DNA of 64,000 bases. It comes from Macrostomum lignano (Eukaryota). The position numbers were made by a program, and so were the translations under genes. The stretch is from contig NIVC01000462.1 of assembly GCA_002269645.1 (NCBI GenBank), positions 57,143 through 121,142 on the forward strand, written 5' to 3'. Position 1 is the stretch's first letter. Every line of letters begins with the position of its first letter. Below the pieces are notes generated by a model. That model made no database searches. It was not told where the DNA came from and worked only from the letters and a program-made list of their open reading frames with translations. Below, piece by piece: positions 5,118 through 60,300 of the stretch.

Positions 5118-7714
5118 CAATTTAATCCGCAATAGAGAACTCCAATTCATTCCGCCGTCACTAGAGATATGTCTATGACCAAATATGCTGTTTTTTCAAT
5201 TTAATCCGCAATAGAGAACTCCAATTCATTCCGCCGTCACTAGAGATATGTCTATGACCAAATATGCTGTTTTTTCAATTTAATCCGCAATAGAGAACTC
5301 CAATTCATTCCGCCGTCACTAGAGATATGTCTATGACCAAATATGCTGTTTTTTCAATTTAATCCGCAATAGAGAACTCCAATTCATTCCGCCGTCACTA
5401 GAGATATGTCTATGACCAAATATGCTGTTTTTCAATTTAATCCGCAATAGAGAACTCCAATTCATTCCGCCGTCACTAGAGATATGTCTATGACCAAATA
5501 TGCTGTTTTTTCAATTTAATCCGCAATAGAGAACTCCAATTCATTCCGCCGTCACTAGAGATATGTCTATGACCAAATATGCTGTTTTTTCAATTTAATC
5601 CGCAATAGAGAACTCCAATTCATTCCGCCGTCACTAGAGATATGTCTATGACCAAATATGCTGTTTTTCAATTTAATCCGCAATAGAGAACTCCAATTCA
5701 TTCCGCCGTCACTAGAGATATGTCTATGACCAAATATGCTGTTTTTTCAATTTAATCCGCAATAGAGAACTCCAATTCATTCCGCCGTCACTAGAGATAT
5801 GTCTATGACCAAATATGCTGTTTTTCAATTTAATCCGCAATAGAGAACTCCAATTCATTCCGCCGTCACTAGAGATATGTCTATGACCAAATATGCTGTT
5901 TTTTCAATTTAATCCGCAATAGAGAACTCCAATTCATTCCGCCGTCACTAGAGATATGTCTATGACCAAATATGCTGTTTTTTCAATTTAATCCGCAATA
6001 GAGAACTCCAATTCAGTCCGCCGTCACTAGAGATATGTCTATGACCAAATATGCTGTTTTTCAATTTAATCCGCAATAGAGAACTCCAATTCATTCCGCC
6101 GTCACTAGAGATATGTCTATGACCAAATATGCTGTTTTTTCAATTTAATCCGCAATAGAGAACTCCAATTCATTCCGCCGTCACTAGAGATATGTCTATG
6201 ACCAAATATGCTGTTTTTTTCAATTTAATCCGCAATAGAGAACTCCAATTCATTCCGCCGTCACTAGAGATATGTCTATGACCAAATATGCTGTTTTTTC
6301 AATTTAATCCGCAATAGAGAACTCCAATTCATTCCGCCGTCACTAGAGATATGTCTATGACCAAATATGCTGTTTTTTCAATTTAATCCGCAATAGAGAA
6401 CTCCAATTCATTCCGCCGTCACTAGAGATATGTCTATGACCAAATATGCTGTTTTTTCAATTTAATCCGCAATAGAGAACTCCAATTCATTCCGCCGTCA
6501 CTAGAGATATGTCTATGACCAAATATGCTGTTTTTTCAATTTAATCCGCAATAGAGAACTCCAATTCATTCCGCCGTCACTAGAGATATGTCTATGACCA
6601 AATATGCTGTTTTTCAATTTAATCCGCAATAGAGAACTCCAATTCATTCCGCCGTCACTAGAGATATGTCTATGACCAAATATGCTGTTTTTCAATTTAA
6701 TCCGCAATAGAGAACTCCAATTCATTCCGCCGTCACTAGAGATATGTCTATGACCAAATATGCTGTTTTTTCAATTTAATCCGCAATAGAGAACTCCAAT
6801 TCATTCCGCCGTCACTAGAGATATGTCTATGACCAAATATGCTGTTTTTTCAATTTAATCCGCAATAGAGAACTCCAATTCAGTCCGCCGTCACTAGAGA
6901 TATGTCTATGACCAAATATGCTGTTTTTCAATTTAATCCGCAATAGAGAACTCCAATTCATTCCGCCGTCACTAGAGATATGTCTATGACCAAATATGCT
7001 GTTTTTTCAATTTAATCCGCAATAGAGAACTCCAATTCATTCCGCCGTCACTAGAGATATGTCTATGACCAAATATGCTGTTTTTTTCAATTTAATCCGC
7101 AATAGAGAACTCCAATTCATTCCGCCGTCACTAGAGATATGTCTATGACCAAATATGCTGTTTTTTCAATTTAATCCGCAATAGAGAACTCCAATTCATT
7201 CCGCCGTCACTAGAGATATGTCTATGACCAAATATGCTGTTTTTTCAATTTAATCCGCAATAGAGAACTCCAATTCATTCCGCCGTCACTAGAGATATGT
7301 CTATGACCAAATATGCTGTTTTTTCAATTTAATCCGCAATAGAGAACTCCAATTCATTCCGCCGTCACTAGAGATATGTCTATGACCAAATATGCTGTTT
7401 TTTCAATTTAATCCGCAATAGAGAACTCCAATTCATTCCGCCGTCACTAGAGATATGTCTATGACCAAATATGCTGTTTTTCAATTTAATCCGCAATAGA
7501 GAACTCCAATTCATTCCGCCGTCACTAGAGATATGTCTATGACCAAATATGCTGTTTTTCAATTTAATCCGCAATAGAGAACTCCAATTCATTCCGCCGT
7601 CACTAGAGATATGTCTATGACCAAATATGCTGTTTTTTCAATTTAATCCGCAATAGAGAACTCCAATTCATTCCGCCGTCACTAGAGATATGTCTATGAC
7701 CAAATATGCTGTTT
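5118..7714. repeat. 79-bp satellite, ~33 near-identical copies
   Basis: Unit CAATTTAATCCGCAATAGAGAACTCCAATTCATTCCGCCGTCACTAGAGATATGTCTATGACCAAATATGCTG(T)5-7. Variation is almost only T-run length plus one recurrent T>G (6016, 6883). Confidence 0.97.
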
Positions 7715-28300: not shown

Positions 28301-28619
28301 GCCGCCATGGCGGTTGTGGCCGCCCTCTTCACCCTGCTGTGCGGCCTGCAGCCTTGCAAAGGCATCGACGCTCACGTGGCCGAGGTCGGAATTTATTCGA
28401 TTTTTACAGAATATAGCAATCATGCACTTTGTGTGCTACTTATTTAGCTACTGGGCAGTAGAATGCCTAAACTCTATATATTTAATTCCGCTAAATGCAC
28501 GCAGGTGATTGAGCAGCGAAACAGCAAAGCGCCGCATTTTCTGCCTAAAGTGGCTTTCAATAGGAATAATACAGCTAAGAGGTGAGTCCGACTTGCTTTC
28601 TAGTGTCTGTCTTAGTGGC

Positions 28620-28682
<63 letters not shown>

Positions 28683-28683
28683 G

Positions 28684-28730
<47 letters not shown>

Positions 28731-28731
28731 G

Positions 28732-28798
<67 letters not shown>

Positions 28799-28816
28799 GT
28801 GTCTGTCTGTCTGTCA

Positions 28817-28870
<54 letters not shown>

Positions 28871-28871
28871 G

Positions 28872-28910
<39 letters not shown>

Positions 28911-28952
28911 GTGTCTGTCTGTCTGTCTGTCTGTGTGTCTGTCTGTCTGTCA

Positions 28953-29006
<54 letters not shown>

Positions 29007-29007
29007 G

Positions 29008-29046
<39 letters not shown>

Positions 29047-29047
29047 G

Positions 29048-29086
<39 letters not shown>

Positions 29087-29104
29087 GTGTCTGTCTGTCT
29101 GTCA

Positions 29105-29174
<70 letters not shown>

Positions 29175-29175
29175 G

Positions 29176-29230
<55 letters not shown>

Positions 29231-29231
29231 G

Positions 29232-29290
<59 letters not shown>

Positions 29291-29291
29291 G

Positions 29292-29340
<49 letters not shown>

Positions 29341-32300
29341 GACTACACCCTGTATGCCATCACACTGTCCATCGCGCAGCTACGCCACCGAGTCCATCAC
29401 TCCTGAGCTGCTGTTCTCAACCGACCAGATCGAATCCGAGCTGAAGGCGGCCGGCTTCGACACCAGCACCCTGCGGCAGCCATACGAGTCGCTGATGGAC
29501 CTGCGTGCTAAGCTAGGTGACGAGATAAACGCATCGAACAGAGGTGAGGCCATGGTCAGAGCTTGGTTTAAACAAATTGACTGTAATACTTTGCTGCAAT
29601 TTAAGTTTGTCTGTTTGTTTTTATAAATTCGCTAGTAAAATGATACATTTACATGTAAATACAAGAGTGCAAATAAATATTAACGCCCGAACACTCGGCT
29701 ATCTGGTCTACTAGGCGGATTTGTTGGATTCGGCAGGCAGCAGCCAAAGCGAAGGGAGTCAACATTTCACTGTAAATAATATCTGCGTATGCGTTTTGGC
29801 CGTCCTGATTCGATGGCTCAATAATATCAATGTGTTTCAATATATGGCCATTGTAGTTTCATAAATTTAAATCTTTCTCAAAACTTTGGCGTATTGATTC
29901 ATTCAAATCAGTAATTGCTGCCAGATAGATTGGTTGCGGGCCAGTTCCTTATCCATCAGTGTACTCTTATAGCTTAGCGAAATTTATACATTGTTCCCTC
30001 TCAATGTACACTCTGCCTGCCCCCACCAACCCATAGACCCTCTGCCTCTCTCCCCAATGTACACATTGCCTGCCCCTTCCAACCCATAGACCCTCTGCCT
30101 CTCTCCCCAATGTACACTTTGCCTGCCCCTTCAACCCATAGACCCTCTGCCTCTCTCCCCAATGTACACTTTGCCTGCCCCTTCCAACCCATAGACCCTC
30201 TGCCTCTCTCCCCAATGTACATATTGCCTGCCCCCTTCAACCCAAAGACCCTCTGCCTCTCTCCCCAATTTACACATTGCCTGCCCCCTCTAACCCATAG
30301 ACCCTCTGCCTCTCTCCCCAATGTACACATTGCCTGCCCCCACCAACCCATAGACCCTCTGCCTTTCTCCCCAATGTACACATTGCCTGCCCCTTCCAAC
30401 CCATAGACCCTCTGACTCTCTCCCCAATGTACACTTTGCCTGCCCCTTCAACCCATAGACCCTCTGCCTCTCTCCCCAATGTACACTTTGCCTGCCCCTT
30501 CCAACCCATAGACCCTCTGCCTCTCTCCCCAATGTACATATTGCCTGCCCCCTTCAACCCAAAGACCCTCTGCCTCTCTCCCCAATTTACACATTGCCTG
30601 CCCCCTCTAACCCATAGACCCTCTGCCTCTCTCCCCAATGTACACATTGCCTGCCCCACCAACCCATAGACCCTCTGCCTCTCTCCCCAATGTACACATT
30701 GCCTGCCCCCTCCAACCCATAGACCCTCTGCCTCTCTCCCCAATGTACACTTTGCCTGCCCCCTCTAACCCATAGACCCTCTGCCTCTCTCCCCAATGTA
30801 CACATTGCCTGCCCCCTCCAACCCATAGACCCTCTGCCTCTCTCCCCAATGTGCACATTGCTTGCCCCTCCAACCCATAGACCCTCTGCCTCTCTCCCCA
30901 ATGTACACATTGCCTGCCCCCTCCAACCCATAGACCCTCTGCCTCTCTCCCCAATCAATTTATTATTGATTTCGTTCTGCATGTAGGAATACTCTTTTGG
31001 GTGTTAAATCTATTATTGACTAATTGTTTCAATCTCTGACATTAATTGGTTTAAGTGAGTAGATTTATGATTTTTTCGAGTTTTTTCATCTCACCTAAAG
31101 TTTAATAATGATTAACAGTAAAATGAATACTTTTTTCTGTACAGTACTTGTTCTTAAGAAAATTTATCTCTGCTTAAATTTGATTCTCACAACTTCCATT
31201 ATCATTCCCATTGTCCCCACAGATTGGGTTGTAGTGACGGAGTGTTCCTATATTATGGGGGGGGGGCTGGCTTCAAATCCTTTTCATTTATCTGTGCAAT
31301 TCGATGTATGAAATATTAATATTAACAATAATTAACCACACAGCGATTATTCACCTATAGAGTCAATAATAATTGTTATTTCACTAATAATTTCTATCAC
31401 TCTTTTTGCCGGATTTTTTAAAGTCAAGTGAAATAAAATAATTTGCGCATTCGCACATTTCATTTTAGCAGTAGTACTAGTAGTAGTGCGATATAGGTTA
31501 TCAAACATTTTGTTATAATTTATTTTTCATTATAAATCCTTTGTTTTAGTTCGTAAGTATGAGGCACCCGGTTGAATCCGGTTGAGTGGTCAGTTTGATA
31601 AACGGCAGATCATTGATTAGATTAATTTGTTATAACTATTTTAACTAACCACATTAACACGTGTTTTTAACCACTAACATTTGCGTAGCATATGATGTTA
31701 TAGTTATTATTTATTTATTTCATTGCATTTGCTTTTATTTGTTAACTTAAGTTTTGGTTTTTAACTTCTGCAGTTTTTGCATGCCCAGTGAGCTCTGCAT
31801 CTCTGCTTTTCTCTTTGTCTCCCTTTCCGCCTCTTGTGTACCTCTACCTCCACCTCCTATCTACCTCTCCACCTATCTCCTTCTTTAACTCTCCTATCTG
31901 TTTCTCTCCTCTCCTGTCTCCCTCTCTGCCTCTCCTATCTTATCTACCTCTCCTCCCACCTCTTCTATGTACCTCTCCCTTCCCCAATTTCCACCCTCTC
32001 TCTAGATCCTCTCTTCTTTATCTCATCCTCTCCCTCACTTTTTCCCATATCTCCTTCCCTTTCCCACTCTAATCTATTTTATCCCTCTCTTTCATGGCTC
32101 TCACCAAGTTATTGATCACCGGTAAAAAGATAGTGTATAAAGTTATTATCGATACATATCGGGTGAATCAACTTTAGTACTATCTAGCGGCTCAATTTGC
32201 ACGAGGATCTTCGACTGCCTTTAGGATTAGAAAAAAGTGCAATGCTAAAAAATCAGCCATTCCTTTCTCATCCAAGCTTACTAACGCAACCAATAGCTAA

Positions 32301-40500: not shown

Positions 40501-43500
40501 CAGAATCGCCTGAGATATCTCTACAGAATCGCCTGGGATATCTCCCTAGAATCACCTGAGATATCTCCCTAGAATCACCTGAGATATCTCCCTAGAATCA
40601 CCTGAGATATCTCCCTAGAATCGCCTGAGATATCTCTACAGAATCGCCTGGGATATCTCCCTAGAATCACCTGAGATATCTCCCTAGAATCGCCTGAGAT
40701 ATCTCCCTAGAATCGCCTGAGATATCTCCCTAGAATCGCCTGAGATATCTCTACAGAATCGCCTGAGATATCTCTACAGAATCGCCTGGGATATCTCCCT
40801 AGAATCACCTGAGATATCTCCCTAGAATCACCTGAGATATCTCCCTAGAATCACCTGAGATATCTCCCTAGAATCACCTGAGATATCTCCCTAGAATCGC
40901 CTGAGATATCTCTACAGAATCGCCTGAGATATCTCTACAGAATCGCCTGGGATATCTCCCTAGAATCACCTGAGATATCTCCCTAGAATCGCCTGAGATA
41001 TCTCCCTAGAACCGCCTGGGATATCTCCCTAGAATCGCCTGAGATATCTCCTTAGAATCGCCTGAGATATCTCCCCAGAATCGCCTGAGATATCTCCCTA
41101 GAATCGCCTGAGATATCTCCCCAGAATTCTTCCCCCTCTCATCCAACCCCAGGGCTCCTACGCGGAGAGCCAGAAAATCACCGCGGTCCGCAAGATCTAC
41201 CAGAAGGCCATCGTCACTCCGATGGTGAACATCGACCAGGTGTGGCGCGACTACAGCAGCTTCGAGACCGGCCTGAACGCCGCTCTGGCCAAGAAGTTCA
41301 TCGAGGACCGTCAGCGGGACTACATGAACGCTAAGCGAGTCGCTAAGGAGCTCGAGATTGTTACCAAGGGCATCAACCGGAACTGGCCTTCGACTCCGCC
41401 TACGAATAATCCTGACGAGGCCAGACAGGTGGAGCTGTGGAAAAAGTACATCGCCTGGGAGAAGGACAACCCGCTGCGCACTGACGACTTGTCGCTGATC
41501 TCCAAGAGAGGTACACAGCATTTGAAATATCCCTCAATCCTGATCCCAAATATCCCTCAATCCTGATCCCAAATATCCCTCAATCCTGATCCCAAATATC
41601 CCTCAATCCTGATCACAAATGTCTCCCATCTCTGATCCCAAATATCCCTCAATCCAGATCCCAAATATCCCTCAATCCAGATCCCAAATATCCCTCAATC
41701 AAGATCCCAACTATCCCTCAATTCAGATCCTAAATATCCCCCAATTCAGATCCCAAATATTCCTCAATCCAGATCCTAAATATCCCTCAATTCAGATCCC
41801 AAATATCCCTCAATCTAGATCCCAAATATCCCTCAATTCAGATCCTAAATATCCCTCAATTCAGATCCCAAATATCCCTCAATTTAGATCCCAAATATCC
41901 CTCAATTCAGATCCCAAATATTCCTCAATCCAGATCCTAAATATCCCTCAATTCAGATCCCAAATATCCCTCAATCCAGATCCCAAATATCCCTCAATTT
42001 AGATCCCAAATATCCCTCAATTCAGATCCTAAATATCCCTCAATTTAGATCCCAAATATCCCTCAATTCAGATCCCAAATATCCCTCAACTCAGATCCCA
42101 AATATCCCTCAATTCAGATCCTAAATATCCCTCAATTTAGATCCCAAATATCCCTCAATTCAGATCCCAAATATCCCTCAACTCAGATCCCAAATATCCC
42201 TCAATTCAGATCCCAAATATCCTTCAATCCAGATCCCAAAAACTTCTCATCTCAGATCCGGAAGAATCCCATTTTTCCCCTTCCCAGTAATGTTCGCGTA
42301 CGAGCAGTGCCTGCTGTGCCTGGGCCACCACCCGGACATCTGGTACGAAGCCGCCTCGTTCTTGGAGCAGGCCAGTCGCACTCTGATAGAGAAAGGGGTA
42401 AGAGAGTTTGTTCAGTGGTTTTCGTGAGTCACTTTTAGTGCTCATGTCTCATATTTAAAGTTTCTTATTGACACTGCCCTGTCCCACCCACCAGGAACCG
42501 ATGGCTGCTAAGCAGTTCGCTGATGAGGCGGCCTCGATGTACGACAGAGCCACTCAGGTGCTCAAGGAGAACACCTTGCTGTACTTTGCCTATGCGGACT
42601 ATGAGGAGGTAAACTTTTCTGGCTAAGGGTTACTGAGATTCCATTAGGTATGAATAAAGTGAATGAGATTAACCCAGAACTCAGTGAGATTAACGGAGAA
42701 TCTGGTGAGATTATCTGCGAATTAGGTGAGATTATATGAGAGTTGTGTAGGATTATCTGAGAATTGGTTAAGGTTATCTAGGAATCGGGTGAGTTTATCT
42801 TAGAATTGGTACGAGGTGAACTGGGAATCACCTCGTTCTGATTATCTTAGAACTGGGAAAGATTATCTGAGAATTGGGTAAGGTTATCTGAGAATTGTGT
42901 GAGATTATCTTAGAACTGGGAAAGATTATCTGAGAATTGGGTAAGGTTATCTGAGAATTGTGTGAGATTATCTGAGAATTGTGTGAGATTATCTGAGAAT
43001 TGTGTGAGATTATCTGAGAATTGTGTGAGATTATCTGAGAATTGTGTGAGATTATCTTAGAATTAGGAAAGATTATCTTAGAATTGTGTGATATTATCTG
43101 AGAATTGTGTGAGATTATCTTAGAATTAGGAAAGATTATCTTAGAATTGGGAAATATTATCTGAGAATTGGGTGGGATTATTTGAGAGTTGGGTGCCATT
43201 ATCTGAGAATTGTGTGAGATTATCTGAGAATTGAATGATATTATCTGAGAATTGTGTGAGATTATCTGAGAATTGAATGATATTATCTGAGAATTAGTGG
43301 AGATTAGCTGATGATTGAATGATTGAATGAGATTATCTTAGAATCTGGGTGAGACTGACAGAACTATAGGCAATACTGTTTGAGAACTCGGTGAGATGAA
43401 ACCTCATCCACCCTCGCCGTCGCCAGGGCCGCGGCAACTTCGAGAAGGTGCACTCGATCTACCGCAAGCTGGTGAACGTAGACAGCATCGACCCGACGCT

Positions 43501-46456
43501 GCCGTACATTCAGTACATGAAGTTCGCCCGCCGCAAGGAGGGCATCAAGTCGGCCCGCAGCGTGTTCAAGCTGGCCCGCGCGGACCCGCACTGCACCTAC
43601 CATATATTCGCCGCAGCCGCTCTCATGGAGTACTTCTGCAGCAAGGACCCGGCACTGGGCCAGAGAATTTTCGACCTGGGCATGAAGAGATTCGGCCAGG
43701 TGCCGGAGTACGTGCTCTGCTACACAGAGTACATGTCCCATCTGAATGAGGACAACAACACCCGGGTGCTGTTTGAGCGGGCGCTCACCTCCGGCTCTGT
43801 GCCAACGGAGAAGAGCCGGGTGATCTGGGCCAAGTTCTTGGAGTTTGAGACCAGCGTGGGCGACCTGGCCAGCGTGCTGAAGGTCGAGCGGCGTCGCCTG
43901 CAGGCTTTCCAGGGAGTTGAAGTGTTCCGTGGCAAGGAGACCGCGCTGCTCATTGACCGGTGAGTCTGTACCTGTAACCTGTGTCCGAGTATGTAACCTG
44001 TGTCCGAGTCTGTAACCTGTGTCTGAGTCTGTAACCTGTGTCCGGGTCTGTAACCTGTCTGAGTCTGTAACCTGTGTCCGAGTCTGTAACCTGTGTGTGT
44101 ACCTGTGTCCGAGTCTAACCTGTGTCCGAATCTGTAACCTTTGTCCGAGTCTGTAACCTGTGTCCGAGTCTGTAACCCGGCTGTGTCCGAGTCTGTAACC
44201 TGTGTCCGAGTCTAACCTGTGTCCGAATCTGTAACCTTTGTCCGAGTCTGTAACCTGTGTCCGAGTCTGTAACCTGTGTCCGAGTCTGTAACCTGTGTCT
44301 GAGTCTGTAACCTGTGTCCGAGTCTAACCTGTGTCCGAATCTGTAATCTTTGTCCGAGTCTGTAACCTGTGTCCGAGTCTGTAACCCGGCTGTGTCCGAG
44401 TCTGTAACCTGTGTCTGAGTCTGTAACCTGTGTCCGAGTCTGTAACCTGTGTCTGAGTCTGTAACCTGTGTCCGAGTCTGTAACCTGTGTCCGAGTCTGT
44501 AACCTGTGTCCGAGTCTGTAACCTGTGTCCGAGTCTGTAACCCGGCTGTGTCCGAGTCTGTAACCTGTGTCTGAGTCTGTAACCTGTGTCCGAGTCTGTA
44601 ACCTGTGTCCGAGTCTGTAACCTGTGTCCGAGTCTGTAACCTGTGTCCGAGTCTGTAACCTGTGTCCGAGTCTTTAACCTGTGTCTGAGTCTGTAACCTG
44701 TGTCTGAGTCTGTAACCTGTGTCCGAGTCTGTAACCTGTGTCTGAGTCTGTAACCTGTGTCCGAGTCTGTAACCTGTGTCCGAGTCTGTAACCTGTGTCC
44801 GAGTCTGTAACCTGTGTCCGAGTCTGTAACCCGGCTGTGTCCGAGTCTGTAACCCGGCTGTGTCCGAGTCTGTAACCTGTGTCTGAGTCTGTAACCTGTG
44901 TCCGAGTCTGTAACCTGTGTCCGAGTCTGTAACCTGTGTCCAAGTCTGTAACCTGTGTCCGAGTCTGTAACCCGGCTGTGTCCCAGTCTGTAACCTGTGT
45001 CTGAGTCTGTAACCTGTGTCTGAGTCTGTAACCTGTGTCTGAGTCTGTAACCTGTGTCCGAGTCTGTAACCTGTGTCCGAGTCTGTAACCTGTGTCCAAG
45101 TCTGTAACCTGTGTCCGAGTCTGTAACCCGGCTGTGTCCCAGTCTGTAACCTGTGTCTGAGTCTGTAACCTGTGTCTGAGTCTGTAACCTGTGTCCGAGT
45201 CTGTAACCTGTGTCCGAGTCTGTAACCTGTGTCCGAGTCTGTAACCTGTGTCCGAGTCTTTAACCTGTGTCCGAGTCTGTAACCTGTGTCCGAGTCTGTA
45301 ACCTGTGTCTGAGTCTGTAACCTGTGTCCGAGTCTGTAACCTGTGTCCGAGTCTGTAACCTGTGTCCGAGTCTGTAACCTGTGTCCGAGTCTGTAACCTG
45401 TGTCTGAGTCTGTAACCTGTGTCCGAGTCTGTAACCTGTGTCTGAGTCTGTAACCTGTGTCTGAGTCTGTAACCTGTATCCGAGTCTATAACCTGTGTCT
45501 GAGTTTGTAACCTGTGTCTAAGTCTGTAACCTGTGTCCGAGTCTGTAACCTGTGTCCGAGTCTGTAACCTGTGTCCGAGGTTGTAACCTGTGTCTAAACC
45601 TGTAACCCGGCTGTGCCCGAGCCTGTAACCCAACTGTGTCCTAGCCTATAACCGGCTGCGTCTTTGTGGAATATTTATTTTTATTTTCGTCTCAGGCTCC
45701 ATGATCTAATCGTACTTCATCACCAGCCGCCCCGCTCCCCCCCCCCCCAGCTACAAGTTCATGGAGCTGTTCCCCTGCTCAGAGCAGGAGCTGCGGTCCC
45801 TGGGCTACACGGACCTGGCCAAGCTGTCCCTGGCCGGCCTATCCAACCCGGCCCTCAGCGGCCTGGCCACGGCCGCTGGCATCGACGGCTCCTTCTGGCT
45901 GCAGCAGTCGCGCGACGTCCAGGCCAAGCGGCCGGGCGGTGGTGCAGCCGCGGCCGCCTACGCCAAGCCCGACTTCAGCCAGATGCTGCCGTTCCGGCCG
46001 AGGGCGCACCCGCGGACCGACTCGCACCCGGTGCCTGGCGGCGAGTTCCCGCTGCCGCCGGCCGCCTCCCACCTGGTGCGCATCCTGCCGCCGCCTACCT
46101 GCTTCCGCGGCCCGTTTGTCAACGTGGACCAGCTGATGGAGCAGATGGCCCAGCTGCCGGTGCCGGAGGACTACGTCAGGCGGCAGTACTCGGCCGAGGA
46201 CCGCCAGATCGACCAGGGCACCGCCTTCAGCATCGAGGTGGCCACCAGCGGCCTGCCCAGCGGTCTGAAACGGCGCAACCTGTTCCCGCCTGATGCTCAC
46301 CTGTCCTTCATGCTGCCGCCGCCGCCGCCCACCGCCGACCCGGCCGATCCGACCGTCATGCCGGCCGACGCCGAGGCCACCGGCGGCGGGAGCAGCGCTG
46401 GCGGAGCCCCTGCGGAGACCTACAGGCACCGGCTGCAGAAGCGAATCAAAACCTGA
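37562..46456 (+). CDS. CSTF3: Cleavage stimulation factor 77-kDa subunit (CstF-77 / suppressor of forked), ~755 aa, 9 coding exons
   Basis: Exons 37562-37573, 38611-38802, 39733-39765, 39855-40064, 41153-41510, 42288-42397, 42495-42608, 43427-43959, 45751-46456 (sum 2268 nt, phases consistent). HAT-repeat motifs: [108 protein letters not shown]. The 4-codon first exon is the least certain part. Confidence 0.95.
37625..38555. repeat. 22-23-bp minisatellite in CSTF3 intron 1
   Basis: Unit CCCTTCAATCCCGTACAGAATCG and variants, ~40 copies. Confidence 0.94.
38835..39690. repeat. Two adjacent G/GT-rich minisatellites (24-bp, then 27-bp) in CSTF3 intron 2
   Basis: GGGGTGGAGTGTGGGCAGGGAATT (~38835-39000), then GCTAGAGATTAGGGTAGAGTGTGCATG (~39020-39690). 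Confidence 0.93.
40152..41125. repeat. 23-bp minisatellite in CSTF3 intron 4, ~42 copies
   Basis: Unit CCTGAGATATCTCCCTAGAATCG containing the palindrome GAGATATCTC. Confidence 0.96.
41525..42240. repeat. 23-bp minisatellite in CSTF3 intron 5, ~31 copies
   Basis: Unit AAATATCCCTCAATTCAGATCCC. Confidence 0.95.
42700..43345. repeat. 21-bp minisatellite in CSTF3 intron 7
   Basis: Unit GAGATTATCTGAGAATTGTGT, degenerate at both ends. Confidence 0.9.
43962..45655. repeat. 19-bp minisatellite in CSTF3 intron 8, ~88 copies
   Basis: Unit GAGTCTGTAACCTGTGTCC; begins directly within the donor site GTGAGTCTGTACC. Confidence 0.97.
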
Positions 46457-50559: not shown

Positions 50560-50722
50560 GCTTCTTCTCAAACTCGCGCGTCGACATCGCGCGTCGACAT
50601 GTGTGATGCTTCTTCCGCGGACGTATGCGATATCGTAGTCGAAAGCGGCCAGTTGGATCGCCCACCGCGTGATTCTCGCCGACGGGACATTCTTGATCTC
50701 CTTGGCTAGGCTGGAGGACAAA
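50560..50722 (-). mobile_element. Gypsy pol fragment (C-terminus of RNase H)
   Basis: KEIKNVPSARITRWAIQLAAFDYDIAYVRGRSITHVDA matches the RI.RW.L.L..FDY.I.Y..G..N..AD motif; a 13-bp tandem duplication (50575-50600) disrupts the end. Confidence 0.8.
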
Positions 50723-53700
50723 GATGAACAGTGGAGCACAGAGATGAGTTCAGTGGAGCACAGATAAACAGTGGAGCACAGAGATGAGTACAGTGGAGCA
50801 CAGAGATGAGTTCAGTGGAGCACAGATAAACAGTGGAGCACAGAGATGAGTACAGTGGAGCACAGAGATGATTACAGTGGAGCACAGAGATGAGTTCAGT
50901 GGAGCACAGAGATGATTACAGTGGAGCACAAAGATGAGTTCAGTGGAGCACAGAGATTATTACAGTGGAGCACAGAGATGATTACAGTGGAGCACAGAGA
51001 TGATTACAGTGGAGCACAGAGATGAGTGCAGTGGAGCACAGATAACAGTGGAGTACAGAGAGATTAGTACAGTGGAGCACTGAGATGATTACAGTGGAGC
51101 ACAAAGATGAGTTCAGTGGAGCACAGAGATTATTACAGTGGAGCACAGAGATGATTACAGTGGAGCACAGAGATGATTACAGTGGAGCACAGAGATGAGT
51201 GCAGTGGAGCACAGAGATGAGTGCAGTGGAGCACAGATAAACAGTGGAGTACAGAGAGATTAGTACAGTGGAGCACTGAGATAAACAGTGGAACACAGAG
51301 ATGAGTACAGTGGAGCACAGAGATGATTACAGTGGAGCACAGAGATGATTGCAGTGGAGCACATAGATGATTACAGTGGAGCACTGAGATAAACAGTGGA
51401 GCACAGAGATGAGTGCAGTGGAGCACTGAGATGATTACAGTGGAGCACTGAGATAAACAGTGGAGCACAGAGATGAGTGCAGTGGAGCACTGAGATGAGT
51501 ACAGTGGAACACAGAGATAAGTACAGTGGAACACAGAGATAAGCACAGGGACGATTACAGTGGAGCACAGAGATGATTGCAGTGGAGCACAGAGATGAGT
51601 TCAGTGGAGCACAGAGATGAGTTCAGTGGAGCACAGAGATGAGTTCAGTGGAGCACAGAGATGAGTGCAGTGGAGCACAGATAAACAGTGGAGTACAGAG
51701 AGATTAGTACAGTGGAGCACAGAGATGATTACAGTGGAGCACAGAGATGATTGCAGTGGAGCACAGAGATGAGTTCAGTGGAGCACAGAGATAAGTACAG
51801 TGGAACACAGAGATAAGTACAGTGGAACACAGAGATAAGTACAGTGGAACACAGAGATAAGTACAGTGGAACACAGAGATGAGTTCAGTGGAGCACAAAT
51901 ATGAGTTCAGTGGAGCACAGATAAACAGTGGAGCACAGAGATAAACAGTGGAGCACAGAGATAAACAGTGGAGCAGAGATGATTACAGTGGAGCACTGAG
52001 ATAAACAGTGGAGCACAGAGATGAGTGCAGTGGAGCACTGAGATGAGTACAGTGGAACACAGAGATAAGTACAGTGGAACACAGAGATAAGTACAGTGGA
52101 ACACAGAGATGAGTACAGTGGAGCACAGAGATGAGTACAGTGGAGCACAGAGATAAACAGTGGAGCACAGAGATGAGTGCAGTGGAGCAGAGATGATTAC
52201 AGTGGAGCACAGAGATGAGTGCAGTGGAACACAGAGATAAGTACAGTGGAACACAGAGATGAGTACAGTGGAACACAGAGATAAGTACAGTGGAACACAG
52301 AGATAAGTACAGTGGAACACAGAGATAAGTACAGTGGAACACAGAGATGAGTTCAGTGGAGCACAAATATGAGTTCAGTGGAGCACAGATAAACAGTGGA
52401 GCACAGAGATAAACAGTGGAGCAGAGATGATTACAGTGGAGCACAGAGATGAGTGCAGTGGAGCACAGATAAACAGTGGAGTACAGAGAGATTAGTACAG
52501 TGGAGCACAGAGATGATTACAGTGGAGCACAGAGATGATTGCAGTGGAGCACAGAGATGAGTTCAGTGGAGCACAGAGATGAGTTCAGTGGAGCACAGAG
52601 ATGAGTTCAGTGGAGCACAGAGATGAGTGCAGTGGAGCACAGATAAACAGTGGAGTACAGAGAGATTAGTACAGTGGAGCACAGAGATGATTACAGTGGA
52701 GCACAGAGATGATTGCAGTGGAGCACAGAGATGAGTTCAGTGGAGCACAGAGATAAGTACAGTGGAACACAGAGATAAGTACAGTGGAACACAGAGATAA
52801 GTACAGTGGAACACAGAGATAAGTACAGTGGAACACAGAGATGAGTTCAGTGGAGCACAAATATGAGTTCAGTGGAGCACAGATAAACAGTGGAGCACAG
52901 AGATAAACAGTGGAGCAGAGATGATTACAGTGGAGCACAGAGATGAGTGCAGTGGAGCACAGATAAACAGTGGAGTACAGAGAGATTAGTACAGTGGAGC
53001 ACAGAGATGAGTACAGTGGAACACAGAGATAAGTACAGTGGAACACAGAGATAAGTACAGTGGAACACAGAGATAAGTACAGTGGAACACAGAGATGATT
53101 ACAGTGGAGCACAGAGATGAGTGCAGTGGAACACAGAGATAAGTACAGTGGAACACAGAGATAAGTACAGTGGAACACAGAGATGATTACAGTGGAGCAC
53201 AGAGATGAGTGCAGTGGAGCACAGATAACAGTGGAGTACAGAGAGATTAGTACAGTGGAGCACTGAGATGATTACAGTGGAGCACAAAGATGAGTTCAGT
53301 GGAGCACAGAGATTATTACAGTGGAGCACAGAGATGATTACAGTGGAGCACAGAGATGATTACAGTGGAGCACAGAGATGAGTGCAGTGGAGCACAGAGA
53401 TGAGTGCAGTGGAGCACAGATAAACAGTGGAGTACAGAGAGATTAGTACAGTGGAGCACTGAGATAAACAGTGGAACACAGAGATGAGTACAGTGGAGCA
53501 CAGAGATGATTACAGTGGAGCACAGAGATGATTGCAGTGGAGCACATAGATGATTACAGTGGAGCACTGAGATAAACAGTGGAGCACAGAGATGAGTGCA
53601 GTGGAGCACTGAGATGATTACAGTGGAGCACTGAGATAAACAGTGGAGCACAGAGATGAGTGCAGTGGAGCACTGAGATGAGTACAGTGGAACACAGAGA

Positions 53701-56374
53701 TAAGTACAGTGGAACACAGAGATAAGCACAGGGACGATTACAGTGGAGCACAGAGATGATTGCAGTGGAGCACAGAGATGAGTTCAGTGGAGCACAGAGA
53801 TGAGTTCAGTGGAGCACAGAGATGAGTTCAGTGGAGCACAGAGATGAGTGCAGTGGAGCACAGATAAACAGTGGAGTACAGAGAGATTAGTACAGTGGAG
53901 CACAGAGATGATTACAGTGGAGCACAGAGATGATTGCAGTGGAGCACAGAGATGAGTTCAGTGGAGCACAGAGATAAGTACAGTGGAACACAGAGATAAG
54001 TACAGTGGAACACAGAGATAAGTACAGTGGAACACAGAGATAAGTACAGTGGAACACAGAGATGAGTTCAGTGGAGCACAAATATGAGTTCAGTGGAGCA
54101 CAGATAAACAGTGGAGCACAGAGATAAACAGTGGAGCACAGAGATAAACAGTGGAGCAGAGATGATTACAGTGGAGCACTGAGATAAACAGTGGAGCACA
54201 GAGATGAGTGCAGTGGAGCACTGAGATGAGTACAGTGGAACACAGAGATAAGTACAGTGGAACACAGAGATAAGTACAGTGGAACACAGAGATGAGTACA
54301 GTGGAGCACAGAGATGAGTACAGTGGAGCACAGAGATAAACAGTGGAGCACAGAGATGAGTGCAGTGGAGCAGAGATGATTACAGTGGAGCACAGAGATG
54401 AGTGCAGTGGAACACAGAGATAAGTACAGTGGAACACAGAGATGAGTACAGTGGAACACAGAGATAAGTACAGTGGAACACAGAGATAAGTACAGTGGAA
54501 CACAGAGATAAGTACAGTGGAACACAGAGATGAGTTCAGTGGAGCACAAATATGAGTTCAGTGGAGCACAGATAAACAGTGGAGCACAGAGATAAACAGT
54601 GGAGCAGAGATGATTACAGTGGAGCACAGAGATGAGTGCAGTGGAGCACAGATAAACAGTGGAGTACAGAGAGATTAGTACAGTGGAGCACAGAGATGAT
54701 TACAGTGGAGCACAGAGATGATTGCAGTGGAGCACAGAGATGAGTTCAGTGGAGCACAGAGATGAGTTCAGTGGAGCACAGAGATGAGTTCAGTGGAGCA
54801 CAGAGATGAGTGCAGTGGAGCACAGATAAACAGTGGAGTACAGAGAGATTAGTACAGTGGAGCACAGAGATGATTACAGTGGAGCACAGAGATGATTGCA
54901 GTGGAGCACAGAGATGAGTTCAGTGGAGCACAGAGATAAGTACAGTGGAACACAGAGATAAGTACAGTGGAACACAGAGATAAGTACAGTGGAACACAGA
55001 GATAAGTACAGTGGAACACAGAGATGAGTTCAGTGGAGCACAAATATGAGTTCAGTGGAGCACAGATAAACAGTGGAGCACAGAGATAAACAGTGGAGCA
55101 GAGATGATTACAGTGGAGCACAGAGATGAGTGCAGTGGAGCACAGATAAACAGTGGAGTACAGAGAGATTAGTACAGTGGAGCACAGAGATGAGTACAGT
55201 GGAACACAGAGATAAGTACAGTGGAACACAGAGATAAGTACAGTGGAACACAGAGATAAGTACAGTGGAACACAGAGATGATTACAGTGGAGCACAGAGA
55301 TGAGTGCAGTGGAACACAGAGATAAGTACAGTGGAACACAGAGATAAGTACAGTGGAACACAGAGATAAGTACAGTGGAACACAGAGATGAGTTCAGTGG
55401 AGCACAAATATGAGTTCAGTGGAGCACAGATAAACAGTGGAGCACAGAGATAAACAGTGGAGCACAGAGATAAACAGTGGAGCAGAGATGATTACAGTGG
55501 AGCACAGAGATGAGTGCAGTGGAGCACAGATAAACAGTGGAGTACAGAGAGATGATTGCAGTGGAGCACAGAGTGTAGAAAAAATACTAAACTAAAGACT
55601 AGAGAGTTACTTGGAGTTAAATTGAACCTAAGATAAGCCAGTAAGTGGGCGCAGGGCCCAAACAAGTATATTTATACCAGACATTAACTTAGGGGGTTTG
55701 AATTGCAGATAATAAAGCGAGGGGTGGAGTGCGCGACTAAATAGAGAGGCGAGAATGGAGAACCAATCAGAAGGCAGCAAGGGAGAGAGAGAGAGAGAGA
55801 ATAACAAGATTGAGCTAGACAGAGAGAGAGAGAGAGAAAACAGAGTAAACAGAGACAAGTGAAGGTGAACTAAGAAATGACTAGGAAAGTCGCAACACTC
55901 CCCCCAAAAAATGGAACATTTTTTAATAAGTGACTACCATTACCAATTGAAATAAATGAGTTAGAATTAAGTCGAATTAAATTGAAAAACACATTCACAA
56001 TAAATGGTGTATAAAACGACTAAGAATTTGAATACAAAAACAGTAGAGTGAATGCAAAATATTAAGACCGAATTTTAAACTTTAGATTTTTAATGAGTAG
56101 TTTTTTAACCAATGAGAAGACTGAAAGGACTGAATAGAGATGAGACTGGATAGACTAGCCCTCCCCCCAAAAAATGTGCAATTTTTAACTGATGACAACT
56201 GGTACATGTACAGTACAGAAAAAATATTAAAAATATCGTCAGTTGAGTACGAGACATGAGATGAGATGAGAATCAGGTTGATGAAAAGAACGACTGGAGA
56301 CGACTGAAGACATTGACAAGAGAGGAGTGAAACTGAGTGAAGAAAATTTGACAAGAGGCCGGTGAGATTGACTG

Positions 56375-57053
56375 CCGACACAGACTCCGAAGCCGAGATC
56401 GACAGCCGAGTGAGAGAATATGCCGCCGGCCCAACTCCAAAGCAGAGACCGACAGCCCAAGTAGAGCAACGAATATGCCGCCGGCCCAACTCCGAAGCAG
56501 AGACCGACAGCCCAAGTAGAGCAACGAATATGCCGCCGGCCCAACTCCGAAGCAGAGACCGACAGCCCAAGTAGAGCTGCGAATATGCCGCCGGCCCAAC
56601 TCCGAAGCAGAGACCGACAGCCCAAGTAGAGCTGCGAATATGCCGCCGGCCCAACTCCGAAGCAGAGACCGACAGCCCAAGTAGAGCTGCGAATATGCCG
56701 CCGGCCCAACTCCGAAGCAGAGACCGACAGCCCAAGTAGAGCAACGAATATGCCGCCGGCCCAACTCCGAAGCAGAGACCGACAGCCCAAGTAGAGCAAC
56801 GAATATGCCGCCGGCCCAACTCCGAAGCAGAGACCGACAGCCCAAGTAGAGCTGCGAATATGCCGCCGGCCCAACTCCGAAGCAGAGACCGACAGCCCAA
56901 GTAGAGCTGCGAATATGCCGCCGGCCCAACTCCGAAGCAGAGACCGACAGCCCAAGTAGAGCTGCGAATATGCCGCCGGGCCCAACTCCGAAGCAGAGAC
57001 CGACAGCCCAAGTAGAGCTGCGAATATGCCGCCGGGCCCAACTCCGAAGCAGA
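56375..57053. repeat. 55-bp tandem repeat (~12 copies) inside the LTR element internal region
   Basis: Unit CCAACTCCGAAGCAGAGACCGACAGCCCAAGTAGAGCTGCGAATATGCCGCCGGC. Confidence 0.95.
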
Positions 57054-57292
57054 GATGCGAGAGATATTAAGCGAAGAGTTGAGAACGTGTTCACGAAGCG
57101 ACGAAAAGCGAAGAGAGGCCGACAGATCAGGCGATTGAGAATCTAGCAGACAAAGCGATGAGGCCGACAGACGAAGCGATGAGCGACGATGACGAGACGA
57201 CGAGACAATGACGAGACGATGCGTGACAAACCAAGTCAGCCAGCCAAGCTGGCACTTAATTAAACTAACTACATCTTCTTAGGTTCTATTTT

Positions 57293-57305
57293 TGTTCGGG
57301 CGCCA
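57293..57305 (-). promoter_or_regulatory. Primer-binding site complementary to the tRNA-Lys 3' end
   Basis: TGGCGCCCGAACA directly abuts the LTR end (..CTACA). It equals the first 13 nt of the established tRNA-Lys(UUU) PBS TGGCGCCCGAACAGGGAC. Confidence 0.85.
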
Positions 57306-60300
57306 TGTAGAAAAAATACTAAACTAAAGACTAGAGAGTTACTTGGAGTTAAATTGAACCTAAGATAAGCCAGTAAGTGGGCGCAGGGCCCAAACAAGTA
57401 TATTTATACCAGACATTAACTTAGGGGGTTTGAATTGCAGATAATAAAGCGAGGGGTGGAGTGCGCGACTAAATAGAGAGGCGAGAATGGAGAACCAATC
57501 AGAAGGCAGCAAGGGAGAGAGAGAGAGAGAATAACAAGATTGAGCTAGACAGAGAGAGAGAGAGAGAAAACAGAGTAAACAGAGACAAGTGAAGGTGAAC
57601 TAAGAAATGACTAGGAAAGTCGCGACACTCCCCCCCAAAAAATGGAACACATTGGGCGCCATGTAGAAAAAATACTAAACTAAAGACTAGAGAGTTACTT
57701 GGAGTTAAATTGAACCTAAGATAAGCCAGTAAGTGGGCGCAGGGCCCAAACAAGTATATTTATACCAGACATTAACTTAGGGGGTTTGAATTGCAGATAA
57801 TAAAGCGAGGGGTGGAGTGCGCGACTAAATAGAGAGGCGAGAATGGAGAACCAATCAGAAGGCAGCAAGGGAGAGAGAGAGAGAGAATAACAAGATTGAG
57901 CTAGACAGAGAGAGAGAGAGAGAAAACAGAGTAAACAGAGACAAGTGAAGGTGAACTAAGAAATGACTAGGAAAGTCGCAACACAGAGATGAGTTCAGTG
58001 GAGCACAGAGATGAGTTCAGTGGAGCACAGAGATGAGTTCAGTGGAGCACAGAGATGAGTGCAGTGGAGCACAGATAAACAGTGGAGTACAGAGAGATTA
58101 GTACAGTGGAGCACAGAGATGATTACAGTGGAGCACAGAGATGAGTTCAGTGGAGCACAGAGATAAGTACAGTGGAACACAGAGATAAGTACAGTGGAAC
58201 ACAGAGATAAGTACAGTGGAACACAGAGATAAGTACAGTGGAACACAGAGATGAGTTCAGTGGAGCACAAATATGAGTTCAGTGGAGCACAGATAAACAG
58301 TGGAGCACAGAGATAAACAGTGGAGCACAGAGATAAACAGTGGAGCAGAGATGATTACAGTGGAGCACAGAGATGAGTGCAGTGGAGCACAGATAAACAG
58401 TGGAGTACAGAGAGATTAGTACAGTGGAGCACAGAGATGATTGCAGTGGAGCACAGAGATGAGTTCAGTGGAGCACAGAGATGAGTTCAGTGGAGCACAG
58501 AGATGAGTTCAGTGGAGCACAGAGATGAGTGCAGTGGAGCACAGATAAACAGTGGAGTACAGAGAGATTAGTACAGTGGAGCACAGAGATGATTACAGTG
58601 GAGCACAGAGATGATTGCAGTGGAGCACAGAGATGAGTTCAGTGGAGCACAGAGATGAGTTCAGTGGAGCACAGAGATGAGTTCAGTGGAGCACAGAGAT
58701 GAGTGCAGTGGAGCACAGATAAACAGTGGAGTACAGAGAGATTAGTACAGTGGAGCACAGAGATGATTACAGTGGAGCACAGAGATGATTGCAGTGGAGC
58801 ACAGAGATGAGTTCAGTGGAGCACAGAGATAAGTACAGTGGAACACAGAGATAAGTACAGTGGAACACAGAGATAAGTACAGTGGAACACAGAGATAAGT
58901 ACAGTGGAACACAGAGATGAGTTCAGTGGAGCACAAATATGAGTTCAGTGGAGCACAGATAAACAGTGGAGCACAGAGATAAACAGTGGAGCACAGAGAT
59001 AAACAGTGGAGCAGAGATGATTACAGTGGAGCACAGAGATGAGTGCAGTGGAGCACAGATAAACAGTGGAGTACAGAGAGATTAGTACAGTGGAGCACAG
59101 AGATGATTGCAGTGGAGCACAGAGATGAGTTCAGTGGAGCACAGAGATGAGTTCAGTGGAGCACAGAGATGAGTTCAGTGGAGCACAGAGATGAGTGCAG
59201 TGGAGCACAGATAAACAGTGGAGTACAGAGAGATTAGTACAGTGGAGCACTGAGATAAACAGTGGAGCACAGAGATGAGTCCCCCACAGTGGAGCACAGA
59301 GATGAGTACAGTGGAGCACAGAGATGAGCAGTGCAGCGAGATTAAGATGATTGAGAAGTGTAAGAACTTTTACCATGTGACATCGGATATGAAATATAAG
59401 TTTTTCTGTTTAATAGGACATACTATGTTTCTTTATTTTGGCACCCAAGACTTATCTATTAGGCAAAAGTTACTTCAAAGATTAAAAAACATATCTGATT
59501 TTGATGCGGCCTCGCTAAAGACATCCTCTCTGCTGATAAATTAGCTCTATGTTTGATTAGTGCTAACTAACTTAGTGCATCATAAGTATCATTAGCTTAG
59601 TTGGCATTAGTTAGTTGATGATCAATATTTGGATAAGAGTTTCCAACTCTGATGAATTCAGCTGCTTGATCGAGGTTAGATGAGCGAGTGGAATTTCTTT
59701 ACGTCTTATTTAAATGTTCCTGCAACCCCGATAGGAGTATTGCTTATGATATTATTGATAATAAATGTGATATACCCTGGTCAGGCTCGTTTGAAGAGCA
59801 AAACTGCCTCTTGAGCCTTAGCGTTCGACGTCAGAGCCACAGGCTCAGCAAATTCTGCAAATTAGAAATTGCATTTTATCGCTGGCAACATTCAGATTCG
59901 CATTAGTTTTGGATATTCCGCCAGTTTTATCCTTTGCAAACAAGTTTCTGGCCTTGAGGGCTCTTAACGAATCTAAATAGCTTCCAGAAGGCTCGCGCCA
60001 CCCAACAGTGGATGCATGAGGTGTGAAATCAAACAGGATTAATGGACTTGCATTATCTTCTGTTTGCAAAAAAAATTTCTCATTTTCCTGAGTATGCACG
60101 GATACGAACTCAGGCAAGCACTTAAAAGGGGTACCTTCTCATCGTGAAGCATGAAATCCCCAACTTCATGTGGGCTGCGCGGGGACTCGAACCCCAGATA
60201 TAAATGCAGGCTGCTAAGCTCGTCTTCCAAGCAAGCAGAGTGCCAGAGGAACTACTGAGTCCAGGATTTTTCTCGTGATGATAGATCACGAGCTGTCTGC

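What the first reader, a model, noticed from the sequence alone, without database searches (positions are those of the whole stretch)
55574..57983. Three-LTR retroelement containing a unit with only 34 bp between LTRs (PBS fused to PPT)
Seen: LTR-1408 bp-LTR-34 bp-LTR. The LTRs differ only by one GA unit and one substitution, and a single 5-bp TSD (CAGAG) brackets the whole structure, so it integrated as one unit, recently, into a satellite. The 34-bp spacer (minus strand TGGCGCCCAATGTGTTCCATTTTTTGGGGGGGAG) holds only a PBS stub and the PPT; it looks like a deletion derivative of the 1408-bp internal region. Established: TRIMs/LARDs are non-coding LTR parasites that often occur as tandem arrays, and TRIM internal regions are usually a hundred to a few hundred bp. 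Inference: this is a chimera of a near-minimal retro-replicon and a LARD-like element, mobilised in trans by an unknown Gypsy partner using tRNA-Lys.
Basis: partly seen in the sequence, partly recalled or inferred. Interest (0 to 1): 0.8.

Follow-up and report, generated by a model that had tools for sequence, protein, structure and literature searches.

The report
Three-LTR retrotransposon with primer-remnant joint
A very young, non-coding LTR retrotransposon sits in a satellite array and carries an extra third LTR joined by 34 bp made only of reverse-transcription primer remnants; this is most likely a one-off replication or repair by-product, not a new kind of minimal mobile element.

Summary
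There are three LTRs of 324, 322 and 322 bp, separated by 1408 bp and 34 bp. They differ by one GA unit and one substitution. One 5-bp target-site duplication (CAGAG) flanks the whole 2410 bp, and I confirmed it against paralogous empty sites in the satellite.

The element reads on the minus strand: LTR3, 34 bp, LTR2, PBS, 1408 bp, PPT, LTR1. It has no gag or pol and carries a 12-unit 55-bp array.

- The 34 bp is not a clean deletion of the 1408-bp region. It needs three extra nucleotides.
- Its breakpoints sit at the primer boundaries. Its layout, U5-PBS remnant-PPT-U3, matches known aberrant cDNA end joints (2-LTR-circle junctions that retain PBS and PPT).
- A single target-site duplication does not prove integration as one unit. 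Integrase-independent insertion at a resident element's PBS also keeps it.

No second copy of the LTR or the junction turned up in any collection I could search, and the host genome is absent from all of them. So there is no evidence that LTR-34bp-LTR is a replicon, and none for a Gypsy partner.

Three-LTR complexes and tandem LTR elements are well documented. I rate interest as modest.

The parts
55569..55573 (.). Left copy of the 5-bp target-site duplication CAGAG
   Evidence: Empty-site reconstruction.
55574..55897 (-). LTR1, the 3' LTR in element sense. 324 bp, TG...CA ends, one extra GA unit at 55783-55784.
   Evidence: alignment; family D5.
55898..55913 (-). 3' polypurine tract with its upstream T-run (CATTTTTTGGGGGGAG), directly abutting LTR1
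55898..57305 (-). 1408-bp non-coding internal region
   Evidence: No Pfam family reaches its cut-off in any ORF. No protein homologs.
56161..56176 (-). Second exact 16-nt copy of the PPT motif inside the internal region, 263 bp upstream of the 3' PPT. It may be a central-PPT-like site or a relic of an earlier rearrangement.
   Evidence: 2 matches against 0.01 expected. About 30 nt of flanking similarity is seen.
56384..57055 (-). 55-bp tandem array, about 12 units at 96% matches, inside the internal region
57293..57305 (-). Primer-binding site TGGCGCCCGAACA, directly abutting LTR2. 13 contiguous nt match the tRNA-Lys3-type PBS.
   Evidence: Reference PBS strings come from PMC1084362.
57306..57627 (-). 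LTR2, the middle LTR. 322 bp, with a private substitution at 57624, which is the 4th nucleotide of the LTR in element sense.
57628..57651 (-). PPT side of the 34-bp joint (TGTGTTCCATTTTTTGGGGGGGAG). It resembles the 3' end of the internal region but has an extra TG and an extra G.
57652..57661 (-). PBS remnant of the 34-bp joint (TGGCGCCCAA). 8 nt are shared with the full PBS; 10 nt match the tRNA-Lys1,2-type PBS.
57662..57983 (-). LTR3, the outermost 5' LTR in element sense. 322 bp, with no substitutions relative to LTR1.
57759..57764 (-). TATAAA box, element-sense LTR positions 220-225, shown here in LTR3 and present in all three LTRs. There is no AATAAA or ATTAAA in the LTR. Promoter function is inferred.
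57984..57988 (.). Right copy of the target-site duplication CAGAG
50712..59328 (.). Host 22-bp satellite with a 2183-bp higher-order period, interrupted only by the element

Best explanation
This is one very recent insertion of a non-autonomous (non-coding) LTR retrotransposon into a 22-bp satellite, with a supernumerary LTR at its 5' end. The 34-bp joint between the outer and the middle LTR is built as U5 end, 8-10 nt of primer-binding site, about 24 nt ending in the polypurine tract, U3 start. That is the layout obtained when two cDNA ends that kept their reverse-transcription primers (the tRNA-copied PBS on the U5 side, the PPT primer on the U3 side) are joined. So the third LTR is most likely a by-product of reverse transcription or cDNA-end processing, not a functional mini-element. 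Two routes fit equally well. (a) Before integration: the minus strand copies an unremoved PPT primer, then makes an end-to-end switch onto a second plus-strand strong-stop DNA that ended inside the tRNA copy. This gives a three-LTR cDNA with two normal ends, which integrase inserts once. (b) After integration: an LTR-length cDNA carrying PPT and PBS tails, such as double-stranded strong-stop DNA, is inserted at the PBS of a resident two-LTR copy by annealing or end-joining repair. The original target-site duplication is kept. Shown: the structure, the target-site duplication, the lack of coding capacity, the imperfect fit to a simple deletion, and the clustering of differences at the joint. 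Inferred: the route, and that the event happened once.
For: 1. Anatomy: coordinates and LTR differences; element-sense reading. The PBS directly abuts LTR2, and the PPT directly abuts LTR1 and LTR2.
2. The joint is not a simple deletion. The minimum edit distance to any concatenation of the internal region's two ends is 3.
3. The breakpoints leave at most 10 nt and at most 26 nt of a 1408-nt region. Uniformly placed breakpoints would do this with probability about 1.3e-4. The breakpoints are therefore tied to the primer sites.
4. Every non-microsatellite difference in the whole structure lies within about 28 nt of the joint: the extra TG, the extra G in the PPT run, and the T>C at the 4th nucleotide of LTR2. 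This pattern fits one error-prone synthesis or joining event.
5. Precedents: HIV-1 2-LTR junctions with both PBS and PPT inserted between unprocessed U5 and U3 (PMC5618025, Table 1 sample HL3a42). PPT changes extend the U3 end (PMC13332604). About 50% of Tf1 cDNA keeps a single-stranded PBS and about 20% keeps PPT nucleotides. Tf1 reverse transcriptase adds non-templated nucleotides. Integrase-independent insertions land at the PBS of resident elements and create tandems, some with truncated units (PMC11042837).
6. Three-LTR complexes flanked by one target-site duplication, with the outer LTRs most alike, are known products of template switching (PMC1950507; bioRxiv 10.1101/452573). Here the outer LTRs have 0 substitutions and the middle LTR has 1.
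Against: No second copy of the family could be examined, so I cannot show that the 34-bp joint is unique to this locus. The PPT-side remnant (24-26 nt) is longer than a typical PPT primer and includes a pyrimidine-rich stretch. Route (a) needs an end-to-end template switch that I did not find documented for this exact product. Route (b) needs a resident copy plus a second cDNA within a very short time. An 8-10-nt PBS could still prime reverse transcription (from my own knowledge, yeast Ty elements use PBSs of about that length), so function is not excluded. The clustering argument rests on three small differences.
Confidence: 0.55

Rival explanations
1. The LTR-34bp-LTR unit is a near-minimal retro-replicon, or the three-LTR form is a master copy that is transcribed through the middle LTR and retrotransposes as a unit, mobilised in trans by an autonomous partner.
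For: The joint keeps exactly the two cis elements needed for reverse transcription. The LTR has no AATAAA or ATTAAA, so read-through of the middle LTR is conceivable. The outer LTRs are identical in substitutions while the middle one differs, as expected if only the outer LTRs are regenerated each cycle. The spacer differs from the ends of the 1408-bp region by three nucleotides, which could reflect separate history.
Against: There is no other copy in the window, in metagenomes, in prokaryotic genomes or in the protein collection, searched with the ORF that spans the junction and with the internal ORF. These negatives are weak, because the host genome is absent from all of those collections. 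The PBS remnant is only 8-10 nt. A 34-bp internal domain is far below the smallest described, which is 122 bp in the 292-bp SMART element (PMC3281118). The middle LTR differs by only one substitution, so any such lineage would be extremely young.
Confidence: 0.13
2. Purely chromosomal origin. Unequal exchange between the 5' and 3' LTRs of sister chromatids or homologues made LTR-1408-LTR-1408-LTR, and a later deletion removed almost all of the first internal region.
For: Unequal LTR-LTR recombination is the classical source of three-LTR complexes (PMC1950507). Intra-locus exchange would keep the target-site duplication. LTR2 and LTR3 share the shorter GA tract.
Against: It needs two rare events within the time in which about 966 bp of LTR gained one substitution. 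A random deletion leaving only at most 10 nt and at most 26 nt has probability about 1.3e-4. The joint also needs three extra nucleotides.
Confidence: 0.15
3. Assembly artefact. A spurious tandem duplication of the 5' LTR was created by the assembler in a repeat-rich region.
For: The region is highly repetitive, with a satellite on both sides. The two adjacent LTRs are 99.7% identical.
Against: An artefactual duplication would not invent a joint made of a PBS remnant plus a PPT segment that normally lies 1.4 kb away. LTR2 and LTR3 also differ by a substitution.
Confidence: 0.05

Closest known systems
Aberrant 2-LTR-circle junctions that retain PBS and PPT ('U5 and U3 mispriming' junctions of HIV-1 and other retroviruses)
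   Same: The order of parts is identical: complete U5 end, PBS-derived nucleotides, PPT-derived nucleotides (sometimes with upstream sequence), complete U3 start. Small untemplated or slipped nucleotides occur at the joint (PMC5618025; PMC13332604).
   Different: Those junctions lie in extrachromosomal circles. Here the joint is chromosomal, inside an element with two intact outer LTR ends and a target-site duplication.
Complex three-LTR LTR-retrotransposon insertions (Sabot & Schulman 2007 template-switch model; Devos et al. 2002 recombination model)
   Same: Three LTRs, flanking 5-bp target-site duplication, outer LTRs most similar (PMC1950507; bioRxiv 10.1101/452573).
   Different: The described complexes contain two complete internal domains. 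Here one of the two is reduced to 34 bp of primer remnants.
Integrase-independent, Rad52 single-strand-annealing insertion of cDNA at resident elements (Tf1/Tf2 in S. pombe)
   Same: Insertion is directed by PBS and PPT tails of the cDNA. New LTRs are placed immediately upstream of the PBS of a resident element. The products are tandems sharing one LTR, some with truncated units (PMC11042837).
   Different: That pathway was shown in fission yeast with autonomous elements. The pathway was not tested here, and the added unit here is LTR-length only.
TRIM, SMART and LARD non-autonomous LTR retrotransposons
   Same: Non-coding internal region with PBS and PPT. Mobilisation in trans is presumed. 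TRIMs such as Cassandra form arrays with shared LTRs (PMC4079214 and PMC7215508, abstracts).
   Different: The 2054-bp two-LTR unit is larger than a TRIM and far smaller than a LARD. The LTRs (322 bp) are longer than is typical for a TRIM. The 34-bp domain is well below the smallest reported internal domain of 122 bp (PMC3281118). No family of copies has been demonstrated.

Membership tests
LTR retrotransposon (structural definition) | Two or more direct long terminal repeats with TG...CA ends | tested here: met
   Three LTRs of 322-324 bp, at least 99.4% identical, reading TGT...ACA in element sense.
LTR retrotransposon (structural definition) | PBS complementary to a tRNA 3' end next to the 5' LTR, and a PPT next to the 3' LTR | tested here: met
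   TGGCGCCCGAACA abuts LTR2 and matches 13 nt of the tRNA-Lys3-type PBS string (strings from PMC1084362). GGGGGGAG abuts LTR1. The host's own tRNA-Lys could not be checked, because the window has no tRNA gene.
LTR retrotransposon (structural definition) | 4-6-bp target-site duplication | tested here: met
   CAGAG on both sides. Empty-site reconstruction matches 6-7 paralogous satellite sites only with one copy.
Autonomous LTR retrotransposon (Gypsy, Copia or BEL) | gag and pol (protease, reverse transcriptase, RNase H, integrase) coding sequence | tested here: not met
   No Pfam family reaches its cut-off in any ORF of the element. No homologs for the longest ORF.
   No partner in the window. 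The host genome is not in any searchable collection.
   The LTR2-1408-LTR1 unit is 2054 bp with 322-bp LTRs. The LTR3-34-LTR2 unit is 678 bp, but its internal domain is below the described range (PMC3281118).
TRIM | A family of independent copies with their own target-site duplications | not testable with these tools
   Only one copy is visible.
LARD | Large non-coding element. PMC3281118 gives more than 8 kb; other definitions give more than 4 kb. | tested here: not met
   2054 bp for the two-LTR unit and 2410 bp in all (PMC3281118).
Template-switch three-LTR complex (Sabot & Schulman) | An internal LTR, flanking target-site duplication, and outer LTRs most similar | tested here: met
   Criteria are listed in PMC1950507.
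Template-switch three-LTR complex (Sabot & Schulman) | Two complete core (internal) sequences | tested here: not met
   One core is 1408 bp and the other only 34 bp.
2-LTR-circle junction with primer retention | U5 end, PBS nucleotides, PPT nucleotides, U3 start, in that order | tested here: met
   sequence compared with PMC5618025 Table 1.
2-LTR-circle junction with primer retention | Located on an extrachromosomal circle | tested here: not met
   The joint is chromosomal, within an insertion flanked by a target-site duplication.

The most novel reading that the evidence does not exclude
LTR-34bp-LTR is a working retro-replicon. Its internal domain would consist only of an 8-10-nt PBS and a PPT, about a quarter the length of the smallest internal domain described. 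It would spread alone or ride as an extra 5' module on a larger non-autonomous element. If so, packaging and dimerisation signals of this family must lie entirely within the LTR.
Probability: 0.1. Interest if true: 0.65.

Novelty: new variant of a known kind. Interest (0 to 1): 0.3.

Why it matters
If the joint is a fossil of primer retention at cDNA ends, it is a rare germ-line record of an aberrant reverse-transcription or integrase-independent insertion product in an animal genome. It also shows one way that tandem LTR structures, which can seed satellites, begin. If instead the 34-bp unit replicates, it would set a new lower limit for the cis requirements of LTR retrotransposition. Either way the practical point for annotation is the same: a single target-site duplication around three LTRs does not by itself show a single integration.

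Tried and rejected
1. Other copies. I looked for the LTR, the junction and the internal region by:
- blastn of the LTR and internal region against the window. Only chance matches.
- Exact-pattern scans of metagenome contigs for LTR end plus PBS and for PPT plus LTR start. 0 hits.
- The same scan of prokaryotic genome contigs. 0 hits.
- Protein-space searches with the 84-aa ORF that spans the junction and with the 319-aa internal ORF. 0 hits.
The host genome is evidently not in these collections, so the decisive genome-wide count could not be made.

2. Host identification. I used the CSTF3/Suf exon. The best identities were 55-66%, to nematode, insect, echinoderm and mollusc entries. Cluster members carry no organism names. 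The host remains an unidentified metazoan.

3. Host tRNA-Lys. ARAGORN and Rfam found no tRNA or RNA family in the window.

4. Is the region downstream of the internal PPT copy a degenerate LTR? The local alignment score of 26 is within the shuffle range (mean 20, maximum 28). Rejected.

5. Nested insertion of one element into another. Rejected, because no LTR is interrupted and there is only one target-site duplication.

6. Simple tandem duplication of the 5' LTR by slippage. Rejected, because the joint contains PPT-side sequence that normally lies 1.4 kb away.

7. One paper (PMC123172) could not be fetched.


Full report
**Observation**

- LTR1 55574-55897 (324 bp)
- 1408-bp internal region 55898-57305
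- LTR2 57306-57627 (322 bp)
- 34-bp spacer 57628-57661
- LTR3 57662-57983 (322 bp)

The LTRs differ in only two ways. LTR1 has one extra GA unit (55783-55784). LTR2 has a private substitution at 57624, G where the others have A. Tandem Repeats Finder independently reports the LTR2/LTR3 pair as a 356-bp period at 99%.

**Target-site duplication**

CAGAG flanks the structure at 55569-55573 and 57984-57988. The host sequence is a 22-bp satellite in which CAGAG recurs in every unit, so I tested whether the duplication is real.

The satellite has a 2183-bp higher-order period, with 91% identity at that offset. This means paralogous 'empty sites' exist. When the two flanks are joined with exactly one CAGAG, 23 nt of left flank plus up to 130 nt of right flank match six to seven other places in the array exactly. 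Each of those places has the same three ATGAGTT units that follow the insertion. With two or zero copies of CAGAG there is no match. So the 2410 bp is a clean insertion with a true 5-bp duplication and no loss of host sequence.

**Anatomy**

The element reads on the minus strand: LTR3, 34 bp, LTR2, PBS, internal region, PPT, LTR1.
- The PBS TGGCGCCCGAACA directly abuts LTR2. It matches 13 contiguous nucleotides of the tRNA-Lys3-type PBS (reference strings checked in PMC1084362).
- The PPT ...CATTTTTTGGGGGGAG directly abuts LTR1.
- The LTR has TGT...ACA ends, a TATAAA box at position 220 and no AATAAA or ATTAAA.
- The internal region holds about twelve 55-bp tandem units.
- It also holds a second exact 16-nt copy of the PPT motif at 56161-56176, where 0.01 matches are expected by chance.
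- No ORF reaches any Pfam cut-off, and the longest ORF has no homolog. The element is non-autonomous.
- At 2054 bp for the two-LTR unit it is neither a TRIM nor a LARD by size.

**The 34-bp joint**

In element sense the joint reads TGGCGCCCAA-TGTGTTCCATTTTTTGGGGGGGAG. That is a PBS remnant followed by the PPT region. Three points bear on its origin.

1. It is not a clean deletion of the neighbouring 1408 bp. The best reconstruction is 8 nt of PBS plus the last 23 nt of the internal region, and it still needs three extra nucleotides: a TG and one more G in the G-run. Over the same period about 966 bp of LTR gained one substitution.

2. The breakpoints leave at most 10 nt and at most 26 nt of a 1408-nt region. 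Uniformly placed breakpoints would do this with probability about 1.3e-4. The breakpoints are therefore tied to the two primer sites, either by mechanism or by selection.

3. Every non-microsatellite difference in the whole structure lies within about 28 nt of the joint: the TG, the extra G, and the T>C at the 4th nucleotide of LTR2. I read this as the mark of a single error-prone synthesis or joining event. That reading is inference.

A weaker lead concerns the remnant itself. It reads TGGCGCCCAA where the resident PBS reads TGGCGCCCGAA. The remnant therefore matches 10 nt of the tRNA-Lys1,2-type PBS against 8 nt of the Lys3 type. If that is real, the remnant was copied from a tRNA primer and not from the resident DNA. 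Only two nucleotides support this, and the host's tRNAs are not available.

**What it resembles**

The order U5 end, PBS nucleotides, PPT nucleotides, U3 start is exactly that of aberrant retroviral 2-LTR junctions in which both primers were retained.
- PPT changes that alter RNase H cutting extend the U3 end (PMC13332604).
- In fission yeast about 50% of Tf1 cDNA keeps a single-stranded PBS and about 20% keeps PPT nucleotides.
- Tf1 reverse transcriptase adds non-templated nucleotides.
- Integrase-independent insertion by single-strand annealing places new LTRs immediately upstream of the PBS of resident elements. This makes tandems that share one LTR, some with truncated units. Such tandems occur in yeasts, bivalves, Drosophila and plants (PMC11042837; PMC12786077).
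- Three-LTR complexes flanked by one target-site duplication, with the outer LTRs most alike, are documented in grasses and attributed to template switching (PMC1950507). Variants are known in rice (bioRxiv 10.1101/452573).

**Best explanation (confidence about 0.55)**

The third LTR is a by-product of reverse transcription or cDNA-end processing. Two routes fit.

Route (a), before integration. The minus strand copies an unremoved PPT primer. It then switches end-to-end, with two untemplated nucleotides, onto a second plus-strand strong-stop DNA that ended within the tRNA copy. This gives a three-LTR cDNA with normal outer ends, which integrase inserts once.

Route (b), after integration. An LTR-length cDNA with PPT and PBS tails is inserted at the PBS of a resident two-LTR copy by annealing or end-joining repair. 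The original target-site duplication is kept.

The LTR variant pattern (outer LTRs with 0 substitutions, middle with 1; LTR2 and LTR3 sharing the shorter GA tract) fits both routes and does not separate them.

**Rivals**

The joint keeps both cis elements, an 8-10-nt PBS might work, and the LTR lacks a canonical poly(A) signal, so read-through is conceivable. But there is no evidence of a second copy anywhere. A 34-bp internal domain would also be far below the smallest described, 122 bp (PMC3281118).
- Unequal exchange followed by an in-place deletion (0.15) needs two rare events and an improbable pair of breakpoints.
- An assembly artefact (0.05) would not create a PBS-PPT joint or a substitution between the copies.

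**Limits**

The host is an unidentified metazoan. A CSTF3/Suf gene lies at 42.3-46.3 kb, and its best database identity is only 55-66%. The host genome is therefore not in the collections I could search, and the genome-wide count of junctions, which is the decisive test, could not be run. The tRNA-Lys assignment rests on human reference strings and on the conservation of tRNA 3' ends.

**Verdict**

The feature is real and was described accurately. It belongs to the known class of complex or tandem LTR-retrotransposon structures. It is unusual only in that one 'unit' is reduced to primer remnants. The claim of a chimeric minimal retro-replicon mobilised by a Gypsy partner is not supported by any evidence available here. 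Interest is modest (0.3).

Noticed in passing
window 42287-46279 (+): A CSTF3 / Suppressor-of-forked gene. Exons lie at 42287-42424, 42486-42608, 43424-43963 and 45752-46279, and the introns are filled with 19-23-bp minisatellite arrays. The best identity to any database protein is only 55-66%, so the host metazoan is not represented.
   Followed up: partly
window 50712-59328: The 22-bp host satellite has a 2183-bp higher-order repeat, with 91% identity at that offset. The retroelement is its only interruption.
   Followed up: partly
window 56161-56176 (-): A second exact copy of the 16-nt PPT motif, with about 30 nt of flanking similarity, lies inside the element's internal region 263 bp upstream of the 3' PPT. 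It may be a central-PPT-like site or a trace of an earlier PPT-region rearrangement in this family.
   Followed up: partly
window 56384-57055 (-): The 55-bp array inside the element is open in all three element-sense frames (ORFs of 248-319 aa). The units alternate between CAG and GTT variants in blocks. There are no protein homologs and no Pfam domains.
   Followed up: yes
window 23900-49600: More than twenty different minisatellite arrays (periods 19-79 bp, many with over 90% matches) are packed into about 25 kb, including (TGTC)n at 28604-29341. This is an unusually minisatellite-dense region.
   Followed up: no
window 5117-7714: A 79-bp satellite with 33 copies at 99% identity.
   Followed up: no
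window 2355-2879 (+): An ORF with a WSC domain (Pfam PF01822, E = 1e-12), probably an exon of a host gene.
   Followed up: no
window 57624: The only substitution among the three LTRs changes the 4th nucleotide of LTR2 and creates the palindrome GTCGCGAC right next to the aberrant joint.
   Followed up: partly
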